Sequence record: PQ741806.1
Strand: one strand, 5' to 3'
DNA: 64,000 bases
A program made the position numbers and the translations under genes. Below, in pieces: positions 24,485-52,437 of this stretch. Numbering within the stretch: position 1 is the first letter of the stretch; every line of letters starts with the position of its first letter. Under the pieces are notes generated by a model. That model had not been told where the DNA came from, searched no databases, and worked only from the letters and a program-made list of their open reading frames with translations.

Positions 24485-25018
24485 TTAACTTTCTAGATAA
24501 CGGATTTGACCATTTTCTAGATAACGTGCTGCGCCATTCTCTAATAGCCGGATAGTATCTGATGTATCATCAATACGTTGAATTAGTATATTACATTCGC
24601 CATAGTAAGCATAACTACTCGACATAGCTACTATCGTGTATGGAACAACATCCGTAGTTGCATTGATTGGTGTTGTATCAAATGAAACATCATCTGGTCC
24701 AAGCTTCCAACCCCGTGAACGGTTGATTTCTTCAGCAATTGCTTTAGGTGTTAAAGTACCAACTATCTTAAGGATAGATCCTTCACCAATAGCTCGTGGA
24801 TCAGCAAAATCTAACCGACGGTAAGTTAACATGTACTTAATGTCAGTAGTAATGTCGATCATTTCAATAAATGTACGTCCAGGCTCAATCGTGGTTGGAC
24901 TAAAAAACATATCTTCAAATGTAACTGTTTCTGGTTTGAAGTTTATTTTTAAATCATCCCGCGCAAGTTTTACTAGCGCGTCCCTCGATGCCATGTCATA
25001 CGGAAAGATATCCTGCAT
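24485..25018 (-). CDS. Virion protein (gp143-like), YxRLD domain plus C-terminal RxLExG triple repeat
   Basis: 177 aa; TYRRLDF; ends IRLLENGAARYLENGQIRYLES. Confidence 0.65.
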   Translation of the reverse strand: MQDIFPYDMASRDALVKLARDDLKINFKPETVTFEDMFFSPTTIEPGRTFIEMIDITTDIKYMLTYRRLDFADPRAIGEGSILKIVGTLTPKAIAEEINRSRGWKLGPDDVSFDTTPINATTDVVPYTIVAMSSSYAYYGECNILIQRIDDTSDTIRLLENGAARYLENGQIRYLES

Positions 25019-42558: not shown

Positions 42559-43434
<876 letters not shown>

Positions 43435-50048: not shown

Positions 50049-50083
50049 GATCTTAAACTTTTTTTAATGTAATACAACATAAA

Positions 50084-50103
50084 GCCCTCCCCGAAGGGAG
50101 GGC
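50084..50103 (-). terminator. MCP operon terminator
   Basis: gccctccc-cgaa-gggagggc with cataaa/ctatg flanks. Confidence 0.85.
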
Positions 50104-50112
50104 CTATGTCTG

Positions 50113-50193
50113 TTACTCTTCTAACTTCCGGGCATTACCGTCTTCCAAATAACGGATAGTCCCATTTTCTAGATAACGGTAACCCTTTCCAGC
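50113..50193 (-). other. In-frame post-stop extension of the MCP gene (AGKGYRYLENGTIRYLEDGNARKLEE*): candidate read-through segment
   Basis: Manual translation after TGA 50194..50196; 26 sense codons then TAA; RxLExG x3 as in the gp143 C-terminus; no in-frame start codon. Confidence 0.6.
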
Positions 50194-52437
50194 TCACGGC
50201 TTAAGATCAGCAAGCTTACCGTTGAACTGAGTTTCGCCCATGACTTTCTGGAAGCCAGTGATCTTGAACTCTAGCGCGAACGGAATGTTGTTGACGTGTA
50301 GGTTGAACGGAATGGCCGCGATTTCGCGAGTAACCTGGTGACCACCACGAGTGATCGGTAGGTCAGCGATAACAGTAGATACGTAGAAGAACTGGCCCCA
50401 GGAGAGGATGTCGTTTTCTTGTTGTACTGCGCGGGTCGGAATTACAACTAGCTTACCATCAAATAGCTGGTTGTTGGTGGAAACGATATCGTACTTGAGA
50501 TAAGCACCTAGAGTACGGTCGTCACCTTTAGTCATTAGATAGTTAGCAATCTCTTTGTCGGAGCAGAAGAGATACATCGGAGTTTCATCCTGGTTACCGG
50601 AGATAACACGGAAGGCAGCTTCAATGTTGGAATCACGGTGAGCCGGGAATAGCTCAGCTTTAACACAGTTTAGGATCGCAGCGCAAACGTCGTCCCAACG
50701 ATCTTTAGACTTGATGGTGTCGATGACTTTCTCAAGATCTAGTTCTTTGTAACGATAGGTCGGACGCATTACAGCGGATAGTGCACCTTCGATGATACCA
50801 AACTTCGGACGGTTGTAACCATTGTGTACAACTTCACGTAGTTGAGCAAGGTAGTTAAGCATGCGCTTAACAGCGTTGTTGCTGTTACGGATGTTGGTGT
50901 TAACAGTTAGAGCTTTAACAACCTCACCCGGACCTTCATCGGTCATGGTGTCCATCGGTAGAGTTACAGGAGCGTGCATCGGGATCGGATGACGGAACTG
51001 TAGTGCACGGGTCTGTAGTAGGTGACCACGCTGACGACGGTTAGTGTTGGTGAAGCGAGTATCTAGTTCGAAACCGATAACAGCTAGGTCAGTTAGCTGA
51101 TCTAGAATAGCTTTAACAGCCGGGTCAGCATTATCCATTACCTGGCCATCTTCGTTTAGAACTTTATCGACGTAAGTGTCGGTAGCACCAAACTTAGAAT
51201 CGCCTTTGGATAGGCTGATAGTACCACCAAAACCAACGCTTAGACGTAGGCTTAGTTTAGCAGTCTTAAGGTCGTTAATAACGCCATCAGCTGAACCGTC
51301 GATGAAAGTGGTATCGCCACTAACAACAAGGTCATCGCTATCGAAACGGATAACTGCGTTCCGGGTATCACCAACTAGATCGGGCTGGAACACAGCGCGA
51401 GGTAGACGGTCAACCTTGAACTTAACAACTTTACCGCCGAGTAGAACGAATAGGTTCTTTAGACGACCAGCCGGATCAATGGTGTCAGAAACTTCAAGCA
51501 TGCCACGCTGAATGAGTAGGTTAGCATTGGAGTTACCCATTAGATCAAGACGTACGTTCGCTTTTAGCGGAGCAGTAGTGATAGTTAGGTTCTGCTCGTT
51601 CTTGATGGTGTACGGAGGAACAAGAGCCGGGTCTACGAAGAAGTCAGCATTGGAACCAGCCGGATCTAGGGCAGGAATTAGTGCAATGCTTTCGTCGTCG
51701 AGGATGGAAGGATCACGATAGGCTTCTACCATGTTCACTTCTTCGTTATCCATCTTAACGCCGGATACTTCGTGGTAAACGTCTTTCATTACAGCGATGT
51801 AAGGAAGAACCTGAACAACACCACCTTCAATCGGGTTGATAACGGTGGTCGGATAGATACGCTCAGCGAATTCATCCTGACGGCTAGCAGCTAGGTTATA
51901 ACCAATAGTTACAACACGGAAATCACGCTGTGACTTCTCGTTATAGTTCTCTAGGCCAACACCATTTTCGAATACTTGAATGCCACCAGCAGGGCCATTG
52001 AACTGATGCTGTACAACCTTAACATGATCTTCATTAGAAGCTTTAGCTTTGGTAATACCACGTAGTGCACGGATATATTTAGTTTCATCAGCACAGGCGA
52101 TAGCAGCCATGGTAGCAGCAGTGATTTGGTTCTCACGGACACGTTCTTCACGAGCACGTACTTGAGGATCACTGGAACTTACTCGTTCGAAACCATAGTC
52201 GTTAACGAGCATTTGCATTTTGTTATAAATTGCAGCGGCATCTTGAATGTCGGTAGCTTGCACGGTACCGAAGTTTTCATGTGAAATGCTGCTAATAAGG
52301 GAACGACCTTGACTAACAACGCTGTCATTTAGACCAATTTCACTTTCTAGGCGGCCAATGAAATCTTCCATTGAGAAGACTTCGTAATTCTTTTCGCCTT
52401 TGTGTTTAAACAGTTCTCTTAGGGCATGTACGCTCAT
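50194..52437 (-). CDS. gp120: Major capsid protein gp120
   Basis: 747 aa; G-L-E at residues 161-163 matches the known prohead-protease cleavage site; strong codon bias. Confidence 0.95.
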   Translation of the reverse strand: MSVHALRELFKHKGEKNYEVFSMEDFIGRLESEIGLNDSVVSQGRSLISSISHENFGTVQATDIQDAAAIYNKMQMLVNDYGFERVSSSDPQVRAREERVRENQITAATMAAIACADETKYIRALRGITKAKASNEDHVKVVQHQFNGPAGGIQVFENGVGLENYNEKSQRDFRVVTIGYNLAASRQDEFAERIYPTTVINPIEGGVVQVLPYIAVMKDVYHEVSGVKMDNEEVNMVEAYRDPSILDDESIALIPALDPAGSNADFFVDPALVPPYTIKNEQNLTITTAPLKANVRLDLMGNSNANLLIQRGMLEVSDTIDPAGRLKNLFVLLGGKVVKFKVDRLPRAVFQPDLVGDTRNAVIRFDSDDLVVSGDTTFIDGSADGVINDLKTAKLSLRLSVGFGGTISLSKGDSKFGATDTYVDKVLNEDGQVMDNADPAVKAILDQLTDLAVIGFELDTRFTNTNRRQRGHLLQTRALQFRHPIPMHAPVTLPMDTMTDEGPGEVVKALTVNTNIRNSNNAVKRMLNYLAQLREVVHNGYNRPKFGIIEGALSAVMRPTYRYKELDLEKVIDTIKSKDRWDDVCAAILNCVKAELFPAHRDSNIEAAFRVISGNQDETPMYLFCSDKEIANYLMTKGDDRTLGAYLKYDIVSTNNQLFDGKLVVIPTRAVQQENDILSWGQFFYVSTVIADLPITRGGHQVTREIAAIPFNLHVNNIPFALEFKITGFQKVMGETQFNGKLADLKP

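What the first reader, a model, noticed from the sequence alone, without database searches (positions are those of the whole stretch)
50113..50196. Hidden stop-codon read-through extension of the major capsid protein with an RxLExG triple repeat
Seen: after ...DLKP-TGA (50194..50196) the same frame stays open for 26 codons, AGKGYRYLENGTIRYLEDGNARKLEE, then TAA (50113..50115), about 10 nt before the operon terminator. It has no start codon of its own. It matches the C-terminus of the gp143-like virion protein (IRLLENGAARYLENGQIRYLES), with a 17-bp identical DNA stretch (ccattttctagataacg at 50162 and 24510). A protein-like repeat preserved in frame in an 81-nt 3' UTR is hard to explain by chance. 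Established: UGA is the leakiest stop in bacteria, and some phages make minor extended capsid/coat proteins by recoding (T7 10B by frameshift, Qbeta A1 by UGA read-through). Inference: a small fraction of capsomers carries a C-terminal peg for fibres or decoration proteins. I am not aware of this having been described for phiKZ gp120.
Basis: partly seen in the sequence, partly recalled or inferred. Interest (0 to 1): 0.9.

Follow-up and report, generated by a model that had tools for sequence, protein, structure and literature searches.

The report
Leaky-stop tail on phiKZ capsid protein
The major capsid gene of phage phiKZ and its Pseudomonas relatives ends in a conserved leaky TGA stop followed by a short, protein-like, evolutionarily preserved in-frame tail, so a small share of capsid subunits probably carries a 26-residue tag, the same tag that ends a tail/baseplate-type virion protein (gp143).

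Summary
gp120 ends in TGA, followed by 26 in-frame sense codons, TAA and the terminator.

One genome proves little: 17.6% of long phiKZ ORFs have at least 26 open codons after their stop. Relatives decide it. In all 24 distinct relatives that carry an R-x-x-E-x-G tail (seven ICTV genera plus uncultivated contigs), the stop is TGA and the frame stays open for 24-30 codons. Invariant Arg/Glu/Gly columns use 2-4 synonymous codons, and pooled dN/dS is 0.42.

Of 30 relatives without this tail, 27 use TAA. One of these sits inside the tail-bearing clade and has lost most of the tail. None of 119 homologue clusters has the tail fused, and phiKZ has no suppressor tRNA.

Best reading: programmed low-level UGA read-through makes a minor extended capsid isoform. 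The same tag is the most conserved part of gp143, a virion protein with a baseplate-periphery-type fold, so a shared docking function is plausible but unproven.

A stimulatory RNA hairpin is not supported. I found no paper describing this. It is a new variant of capsid recoding (Qbeta A1, T7 10B). No peptide or ribosome data were available.

The parts
50194..52437 (-). Major capsid protein gene gp120 (747 codons plus the TGA stop)
   Evidence: ORF list. Pfam PF25620 PhiKZ_MCP, E = 5e-228. 100% identical to PHIKZ120 of AF399011.
50194..50196 (-). TGA stop of gp120, the proposed leaky (read-through) stop, followed by G
   Evidence: The stop is TGA in 24 of 24 distinct relatives with the tail, against TAA in 27 of 30 without it. 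phiKZ long ORFs use TAA 173, TGA 51, TAG 26.
50116..50193 (-). 26-codon in-frame extension: a Gly-rich linker (AGKGY), two 8-residue R-x-L-E-x-G-x-x repeats and a terminal R-K-L-E-E
   Evidence: The frame stays open in all relatives, while the other five frames carry stops in most loci. Pooled dN/dS is 0.42. Invariant Arg and Gly columns use 3-4 synonymous codons, including CGN/AGR switches; the invariant Glu column uses both of its codons.
50113..50115 (-). Second stop (TAA), which ends the extension
   Evidence: Relatives use TAA, TGA or TAG here.
50082..50105 (-). Intrinsic-terminator-like hairpin (10 pairs, 7 of them G-C) followed by a T-rich tail. The mRNA therefore includes the extension.
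   Evidence: An equivalent hairpin plus TTTAT follows the second stop in the relatives.
24485..25018 (-). gp143, a virion structural protein with a gp127-like (DUF7941-type) fold, which carries the same tag at its C-terminus
   Evidence: annotated 'structural protein'. phrog_2935, E = 9e-46. The 201phi2-1 homologue gp228 was identified in virions by mass spectrometry, per the record's note. AlphaFold2 model pLDDT 89.8. The only significant PDB fold match is 9xqd, the phiKZ baseplate outer periphery.
24488..24553 (-). C-terminal tag of gp143 (residues 156-177): the same three-repeat R-x-x-E-x-G architecture ending in R-x-L-E-x
   Evidence: Alignment A5 of 32 homologues at 32-53% identity: R157, E160, R165, E168 and R173 are invariant and G170 is at least 90% conserved.
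50162..50178 (.). 17-nt stretch identical to window 24510..24526 (it encodes R-Y-L-E-N-G in both genes)
   Evidence: 2 exact matches, 0.02 expected by chance.

Best explanation
Proposed mechanism: programmed, low-efficiency read-through of the UGA stop of the major capsid gene. Most ribosomes terminate and make the 747-residue gp120 that the cryo-EM models show. A small fraction inserts an amino acid at UGA and continues for 26 codons to the TAA just before the terminator. The inserted residue is most simply Trp from the host's near-cognate tRNA, because phiKZ encodes no suppressor tRNA. The product is a minor gp120 isoform with a flexible Gly-rich linker and a C-terminal tag of three R-x-x-E-x-G-type repeats.

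The gp120 C-terminal arms meet at the centre of each hexamer, and in pentamers they touch the outer-surface protein gp244. The tag is therefore probably displayed on the outside of a few capsomers per head. The same tag is the most conserved part of gp143, a virion protein with a baseplate-periphery-type fold. So the tag most likely serves as a docking handle for a partner that both proteins share, and the leaky stop sets how many capsid subunits carry it.

Shown: the sequence anatomy, the conservation, protein-level selection, the link between TGA and the tail, the absence of fused versions and the absence of a suppressor tRNA. Inferred: that the tail is translated, the identity of the inserted residue, the read-through efficiency, the exterior location and the docking function.
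For: - All 24 distinct relatives with the tail use TGA, keep the frame open for 24-30 codons and place the second stop just upstream of the terminator. They come from Phikzvirus, Miltoncavirus, Pawinskivirus, Serwervirus, Phabiovirus, Tepukevirus, Noxifervirus, RVTF4, Viktualia and uncultivated contigs.
- Of 30 relatives without the tail, 27 use TAA (Fisher p = 4e-12, not corrected for phylogeny).
- L053 lies inside the tail-bearing clade. It has lost most of the tail through one 59-nt deletion and has TAA followed by T.
- There is protein-level selection. The zero frame is open in 19 of 19 loci, while the other five frames carry stops in most loci (each alternative frame is stop-free in only 1-9 of the 19). 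Pooled dN/dS is 0.42, against 0.17 for the last 100 gp120 codons.
- Invariant Arg and Gly columns use 3-4 synonymous codons, including CGN/AGR switches; the invariant Glu column uses both of its codons. Length differences are whole codons.
- None of 119 homologue clusters from 5.8 billion proteins has the tag fused in frame.
- There is no conserved in-frame start codon.
- phiKZ has 7 tRNAs (Thr, Asn x2, Asp, Met, Pro, Leu) and none is a suppressor or Trp tRNA.
- TGA ends only 20% of long phiKZ ORFs.
- The base after the stop is A (15), G (8) or C (1) and never T, although TGA-T is the commonest TGA context in phiKZ.
- The same tag architecture is the invariant core of the gp143 family. In phiKZ the tandem motif occurs only in these two places.
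- The gp120 model ends at residue 747. The C-terminal arms form a central six-helix bundle in hexamers and contact outer-surface gp244 in pentamers (PMC11297242).
Against: - There is no peptide, ribosome-footprint or structural observation of the extended isoform. No paper in the searched library mentions one.
- The 3.5 A capsid map shows no extra density. A substoichiometric flexible tail would be averaged out, so this is weak evidence either way.
- dN/dS of 0.42 on a saturated dS is only moderate constraint outside the motif columns.
- One lineage (L053) has lost the tail, so it is not indispensable everywhere.
- A read-through-stimulating RNA structure is not supported. Native sequences fold no better than synonymous recodings (mean z = -0.35; 1 of 23 loci below 5%).
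- The loci are phylogenetically related, so the counts overstate the number of independent events.
- The docking function rests only on the shared tag.
Confidence: 0.82

Rival explanations
1. The conserved element is RNA or DNA, not a peptide. It would be a structured 3' UTR (mRNA stability, termination control or another cis signal), and the peptide-like pattern would be a side effect.
For: The region can fold into a hairpin that starts 8 nt after UGA in phiKZ (z = -4.8 against mononucleotide shuffles). In a structure that I named, 85% of cells pair, against 31-60% in slid controls. The codon before each motif Arg ends in C although its amino acid varies, and this is not so in gp143.
Against: Invariant amino-acid columns use several synonymous codons, including CGN/AGR switches. 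The reading frame is preserved and all indels are whole codons. The same peptide motif is encoded by different codons in the gp143 family. RNAalifold finds only a 5-bp helix at -3.2 kcal/mol. Native folding energy equals that of synonymous recodings. No Rfam family reaches its threshold. This reading does not explain why the stop is always TGA.
Confidence: 0.05
2. The tail is a separate tiny gene. It would be translated on its own, by internal initiation or by termination-reinitiation at the gp120 stop, to give a free peptide of about 26 residues rather than an extended capsid protein.
For: In the distant relative L026 the in-frame downstream ORF (a Big_2 domain) has an ATG two codons after the TGA. 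Two GenBank records annotate a small ORF over the region.
Against: No ATG, GTG or TTG is conserved in the tail. Conservation starts at the first codon after the stop, and the tail is always in the gp120 frame. The Viktualia small-ORF annotation is in another frame. This reading does not explain the strict TGA.
Confidence: 0.06
3. The tail is a decaying remnant. On this reading an ancestral longer gp120 acquired a nonsense mutation, and the tail is a relic or a chance open frame.
For: 17.6% of long phiKZ ORFs have at least 26 open codons after their stop. One lineage has lost the tail.
Against: The tail is retained with its motif across seven genera whose gp120 C-terminal coding regions are only about 70-72% identical to phiKZ at the DNA level, i.e. 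about 61-85% at the protein level. Every copy has TGA, and there are no frame-breaking indels. No fused form exists among 119 clusters.
Confidence: 0.02
4. UGA is decoded as selenocysteine. The hairpin downstream of the UGA would act as a bacterial SECIS element recognised by the host SelB.
For: In phiKZ a hairpin follows the UGA, and its apical loop lies about 32 nt from the UGA. To my knowledge bacterial SECIS elements lie directly 3' of the UGA.
Against: Pairing differs between lineages. There is no excess stability over synonymous recodings. No SECIS family or any other Rfam family matched at E <= 1. Near-cognate decoding of UGA needs no extra machinery.
Confidence: 0.03

Closest known systems
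Qbeta A1 (read-through) protein of Leviviricetes phages
   Same: The coat gene ends in a leaky UGA. A few percent of ribosomes read through, and the extended coat protein enters the capsid as a minor component (my knowledge).
   Different: Qbeta is a small ssRNA phage with an unrelated coat fold, and its extension is a folded domain of about 200 residues. Here the phage is a dsDNA jumbo phage with an HK97-type capsid protein of the PhiKZ_MCP family, and the tail is a 24-30-residue repeat tag shared with another virion protein. Incorporation into virions has not been shown here.
T7 capsid proteins 10A/10B, and the frameshift-extended capsid proteins of Listeria phages PSA/A118 and Lactobacillus phage A2
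   Same: A tailed dsDNA phage makes a minor, C-terminally extended form of its major capsid protein by translational recoding at the end of the gene (my knowledge; reviewed in PMC5009743).
   Different: Those phages use -1 or +1 ribosomal frameshifting into another frame. Here the extension is in the zero frame behind a stop, so no frameshift is needed.
Ig-like domains appended to phage structural proteins by recoding (Fraser et al. 2006, my knowledge)
   Same: An accessory surface module is added to only part of the structural-protein copies. The distant relative L026 has TGA followed in frame by a Big_2 domain (Pfam E = 4e-9).
   Different: The phiKZ tail is not a folded domain but a short repeat tag. 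In L026 an ATG lies two codons after the stop, so independent initiation cannot be excluded.
Read-through domains of plant polerovirus/luteovirus coat proteins
   Same: A minor capsid component is made by reading through the coat-protein stop, and it is displayed on the particle surface for interactions (PMC7827187; abstract).
   Different: Those are eukaryotic RNA viruses with a different stop codon and signals and a large structured domain. They share no homology with the phiKZ case.

Membership tests
Programmed stop-codon read-through (translational recoding) | A leaky stop codon is conserved at the junction | tested here: met
   TGA in 24 of 24 tail-bearing relatives, against TAA in 27 of 30 without the tail. 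TGA ends 20% of long phiKZ ORFs.
Programmed stop-codon read-through (translational recoding) | The downstream zero-frame sequence is open and under purifying selection at the protein level | tested here: met
   the frame is open in all loci, dN/dS is 0.42, and invariant Arg/Glu/Gly columns show synonymous codon variation.
Programmed stop-codon read-through (translational recoding) | No independent initiation site for the downstream segment | tested here: met
   No conserved ATG, GTG or TTG in the tail. phiKZ has only one non-conserved TTG, at codon 16.
Programmed stop-codon read-through (translational recoding) | The extended protein, or ribosomes past the stop, are observed | not testable with these tools
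   No proteomic or Ribo-seq data are accessible, and no report was found.
Programmed stop-codon read-through (translational recoding) | A stimulatory context or 3' RNA structure (present in many cases, not in all) | tested here: inconclusive
   The base after the stop is A or G in 23 of 24 relatives, C in one, and never T. Hairpin potential exists but is no greater than in synonymous recodings.
Suppressor-tRNA-mediated stop recoding in phages | The phage encodes a tRNA with an anticodon that reads UGA | tested here: not met
   ARAGORN over the whole phiKZ genome finds Thr, Asn x2, Asp, Met, Pro and Leu only.
Bacterial selenocysteine insertion (SECIS/SelB) | A conserved SECIS stem-loop 3' of UGA | tested here: not met
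   No Rfam hit at E <= 1 for any SECIS family. Pairing varies between lineages. There is no excess stability over recodings.
PhiKZ_MCP (PF25620) major capsid protein | A match to the family profile over the full length | tested here: met
   E = 5e-228, profile positions 1-635 of 635. The profile ends at residue 735, so the extension is not part of the family model.
gp143 family (phrog_2935) C-terminal tag | Three R-x-x-E repeats spaced 8 residues apart, with Gly after the first two, ending in R-x-L-E plus 0-3 residues at the C-terminus | tested here: met
   The gp120 extension has the same architecture. The gp143 family has R157, E160, R165, E168 and R173 invariant. Whether this is homology by copying or convergence was not resolved.

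The most novel reading that the evidence does not exclude
A conserved leaky UGA acts as a stoichiometry device. It gives a few of the roughly 1,600 capsid subunits the same three-repeat C-terminal docking tag that ends the baseplate-type virion protein gp143. One partner (a fibre, a whisker or an assembly/trafficking factor) can then bind both head and tail parts at defined low copy number. The tag would be a previously unrecognised modular attachment signal of the Pseudomonas-infecting Chimalliviridae. MCP read-through may also be more general in the family, because Goslar and L026 show different tails behind TGA.
Probability: 0.35. Interest if true: 0.85.

Novelty: new variant of a known kind. 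Interest (0 to 1): 0.78.

Why it matters
phiKZ is the reference model for jumbo, nucleus-forming phages. Its capsid and whole virion have been solved to near-atomic resolution, yet the extension is unannotated in nearly all GenBank records examined. No paper found here mentions it.

If confirmed, it adds a hidden virion component and, to my knowledge, the first conserved stop-codon read-through in the major capsid gene of a tailed dsDNA phage. It also defines a short tag shared by a head protein and a tail-type protein, which points to an unknown interaction.

It shows too that a comparative screen (a TGA stop followed by a conserved zero-frame tail) can find recoding events in phage structural genes. 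The claim can be tested directly on existing proteomic data.

Tried and rejected
- RNA-structure stimulator. The hairpin looked striking in phiKZ, and a structure that I named beat the slid controls. A synonymous-recoding control showed the stability is simply what the peptide sequence gives. RNAalifold found only 5 weak pairs. I dropped it as a claim.
- 17-nt DNA identity as evidence of gene conversion. Given identical residues and phiKZ codon usage, the chance is about 1.5%, and the result is not needed for the argument.
- Searching for other tag-bearing proteins. A region-restricted search of 5.8 billion proteins returned only gp143 itself. A PDB sequence search with the tail found nothing. 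tblastn of the tail against phages found only the MCP tails and gp143 homologues. A literature search for the motif letters returned noise.
- gp143 in solved structures. There is no sequence match, only a fold match to a chain of 9xqd.
I repeated it with A5.
- Goslar relatives in IMG/VR are too close to test that tail properly.
Full report
**What the window is.** The window is phage phiKZ. The tested 511-nt stretch is 100% identical to AF399011, and the window's minus strand is the record's plus strand. The gene at 50194..52437 (minus strand) is PHIKZ120, the major capsid protein (MCP). It matches Pfam PF25620 at E = 5e-228.

**Check of the observation.**
- Reading the minus strand, gp120 ends ...DLKP, then TGA (50194..50196).
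- The same frame continues for 26 sense codons, AGKGYRYLENGTIRYLEDGNARKLEE, to TAA (50113..50115).
- A terminator-like hairpin (10 pairs) with a T-rich tail begins 7 nt later.
- The 17-nt identity with the end of gp143 is exact.
- gp143 (24485..25018) ends IRLLENGAARYLENGQIRYLES.
- There is no ATG or GTG in the tail, only one non-conserved TTG.

Taken alone it is weak. 17.6% of 250 long phiKZ ORFs have at least 26 open in-frame codons after their stop. Six shared residues would give identical DNA about 1.5% of the time under phiKZ codon usage.

**Comparative evidence.** I collected MCP 3' ends from three sources:
- GenBank phages;
- IMG/VR;
- metagenomes.

This gave 54 distinct loci.
- 24 loci carry a tail with two or three R-x-x-E-x-G-type repeats. 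They come from Phikzvirus, Miltoncavirus (PhiPA3), Pawinskivirus (PS119XW), Serwervirus (201phi2-1), Phabiovirus, Tepukevirus (Psa21), Noxifervirus, the unclassified RVTF4 and Viktualia, and many uncultivated contigs.
- In all 24 the MCP stop is TGA, the zero frame stays open for 24-30 codons, and the second stop lies just before a hairpin-plus-TTTAT terminator.
- The peptides differ a great deal between lineages, but the frame and the motif do not.
- Of the 30 loci without the motif, 27 end in TAA (Fisher p = 4e-12, uncorrected for shared ancestry).
- L053 is especially telling. It sits inside the tail-bearing Psa21-like clade (74% identity), has lost most of the tail through a single 59-nt deletion, and ends in TAA followed by T.
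- TGA ends only 51 of 250 long phiKZ ORFs, against 173 for TAA. Its fixation in the most highly expressed late gene is therefore not the default.

**The selection acts on the protein.**
- In 19 loci the zero frame has no stop, while the other five frames carry stops in most loci; each alternative frame is stop-free in only 1-9 of the 19.
- Pooled dN/dS of the tail is 0.42, against 0.17 for the last 100 MCP codons, with dS near saturation.
- In the codon alignment the first Arg column is invariant but uses CGT, CGA, CGC and CGG.
- The second Arg column (17 of 18) uses CGG, CGT, AGG and AGA.
- The two invariant Gly columns use three or four codons each. The Glu columns use GAA and GAG.
- Gaps in the DNA alignment are whole codons.
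- Among 47 near-identical Phikzvirus records the tail peptide is unchanged, except that it is one codon shorter in some isolates.

**Fusion and independent expression.** A search of 5.8 billion proteins with the MCP C-terminal region returned 119 clusters at 53-100% identity. None has the motif fused in frame. The stop is therefore always kept between the MCP and the tag. This fits a need for most subunits to end at residue 747. No start codon is conserved in the tail. Nearly all GenBank records leave the stretch unannotated.

**How the stop is passed.**
- ARAGORN over the whole phiKZ genome finds tRNAs for Thr, Asn (two), Asp, Met, Pro and Leu. It finds no suppressor tRNA.
- The simplest route is near-cognate decoding of UGA by host tRNA-Trp, which is the classical leaky route in bacteria (established knowledge).
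- The base after the stop is A in 15 loci, G in 8 and C in 1. It is never T, although TGA-T is the commonest TGA context in phiKZ. From memory, A after UGA favours read-through and U favours termination in E. coli.

I tested whether an RNA hairpin stimulates read-through.
- phiKZ folds into a long hairpin starting 8 nt after UGA (z = -4.8 against shuffles).
- A structure that I named pairs in 85% of cells, against 31-60% for slid controls.
- But RNAalifold finds only five weak pairs.
- Native sequences are no more stable than 300 synonymous recodings per locus (mean z = -0.35; 1 of 23 loci below 5%).
- No Rfam family, SECIS included, matches.

The hairpin potential therefore follows from the Arg/Glu/Asp/Gly-rich repeat itself, and I do not claim a stimulator. 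One oddity remains. The codon before each motif Arg ends in C in the MCP tail although its amino acid varies, and this is not the case in gp143 (8 of 18).

**What the tag may do.**
- The tandem motif occurs only twice in the whole phiKZ genome in six frames: in the MCP tail and at the gp143 C-terminus.
- gp143 is phrog_2935, 'virion structural protein'. It is annotated as a structural protein in phiKZ. Its 201phi2-1 homologue gp228 is recorded as a virion protein found by mass spectrometry.
- In 32 homologues at 32-53% identity, the most conserved part is the C-terminal tag. R157, E160, R165, E168 and R173 are invariant and G170 is nearly so. The proteins end 0-3 residues after a final R-x-L-E. 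This is the same architecture as the MCP tail.
- The gp143 family reaches contigs of about 231 kb. MCPs on contigs of that size class end in TAA with no tail. That these are the same phages is an inference from contig sizes. If so, the tag is older in gp143 and the MCP tail is probably a derived copy.
- AlphaFold2 gives a confident globular domain (mean pLDDT 89.8). The tail is extended, with beta-bridges recurring every 8 residues (pLDDT 72-82).
- gp127, a component of that region (PMC13250141), is DUF7941. The gp143 family hits DUF7941 weakly.
- gp143 itself is absent from the published atlas text and from the PDB by sequence.
- Its neighbour gp144 sits in the neck whisker collar.

On the capsid side, the cryo-EM model covers gp120 residues 164-747. 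The C-terminal arms form a six-helix bundle with a pore of about 9 A at the centre of each hexamer. In pentamers they contact gp244, which sits on the outer surface (PMC11297242). A tail on residue 747 would therefore most likely emerge on the outside at capsomer centres. This is an inference. With about 1,615-1,620 MCP copies per head (PMC11512511 and PMC11297242), a read-through of 1-5% would give roughly 15-80 tagged subunits. That efficiency is assumed, not measured.

**Literature.** Full-text searches found nothing describing this feature. The terms covered phiKZ with read-through, stop-codon read-through in bacteriophage capsids, jumbo phages with recoding, and phiKZ with ribosome profiling. 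Neither structural paper mentions it.

**Comparison and verdict.** The logic is that of Qbeta A1 (UGA read-through of the coat gene) and of T7 10B or the Listeria and Lactobacillus phage capsid frameshifts (a minor extended MCP). The setting and the form are new:
- a zero-frame UGA read-through in the HK97-type MCP of jumbo dsDNA phages;
- a short repeat tag rather than a domain;
- a tag shared with a tail-type virion protein.

I rate it a new variant of a known kind. Confidence that the tail is translated as an MCP extension is about 0.8. Confidence in the docking role is about 0.35-0.4.

**Rule compliance.** I used none of the consensus lines printed by the alignment tools.

Noticed in passing
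L042:1286-1375 (Escherichia phage Goslar); L080-L082: The Goslar MCP also ends in TGA followed by A, then 28 open in-frame codons (an acidic peptide without the R-x-x-E-x-G motif), a second TGA and a terminator. All 3 nucleotide differences among three near-identical relatives are synonymous third positions. This may be a second, independent MCP read-through tail.
   Followed up: partly
L026:2278-2892 (IMG/VR contig, 68% identity in the MCP C-terminus): The MCP ends in a Thr-rich linker and TGA. A 203-codon in-frame ORF follows, containing a Big_2 Ig-like domain (Pfam E = 4e-9). An ATG lies two codons after the stop, so read-through and separate initiation cannot be told apart.
   Followed up: partly
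L053 (metagenome contig RCUK01000188.1): This locus is a natural loss of the tail inside the tail-bearing clade. One deletion of 59 nt removed most of it, and the MCP stop is TAA followed by T.
   Followed up: yes
window 50116..50193 and alignment A4: The codon before each motif Arg ends in C (17/18, at least 13/18 and 17/18 loci) although the amino acid there varies. The equivalent gp143 codons show this in only 8 of 18 cases. RNA stability does not explain it.
   Followed up: partly
window 24485..25018 (gp143) and 42562..43434 (gp127): The only significant PDB fold match of the gp143 model is a chain of 9xqd (phiKZ baseplate outer periphery). gp127 is DUF7941, and gp143 homologues hit DUF7941 weakly. 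gp143 therefore looks like a short gp127-type paralogue that has not been placed in the published virion atlas.
   Followed up: partly
proteins P0055-P0173 (MCP homologues): Distant MCP homologues carry low-complexity Thr/Gly/Asp/Pro-rich C-terminal tails. The last residue is Pro in 51 of 119 clusters. Several JGI entries name this MCP 'virulence-associated protein VapD', which looks like a misannotation.
   Followed up: no
L073 (metagenome contig Ga0255088_1000081): This distant MCP (33% identity) ends in TGA followed by T, with 25 open codons lacking the motif. It is the only TGA case without an obvious tail feature.
   Followed up: no
L083, L084 (Phikzvirus isolates fMGyn-Pae01 and NK1): In some Phikzvirus isolates the tail is one codon shorter and ends directly after R-K-L-E. 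All other differences in the 511-nt stretch are synonymous MCP changes or lie downstream.
   Followed up: yes
window 24485..25018: The window's gp143 is 99.4% identical to AF399011 (one residue differs) and 100% identical to several other Phikzvirus isolates. The window may therefore come from a strain other than the reference record.
   Followed up: no
L040:878-976 (Viktualia), and HPP-Temi: Two GenBank records annotate a small 'hypothetical protein' over the tail region. In Viktualia it is in a different frame from the MCP and the tail, so it is probably a gene-caller artefact.
   Followed up: partly
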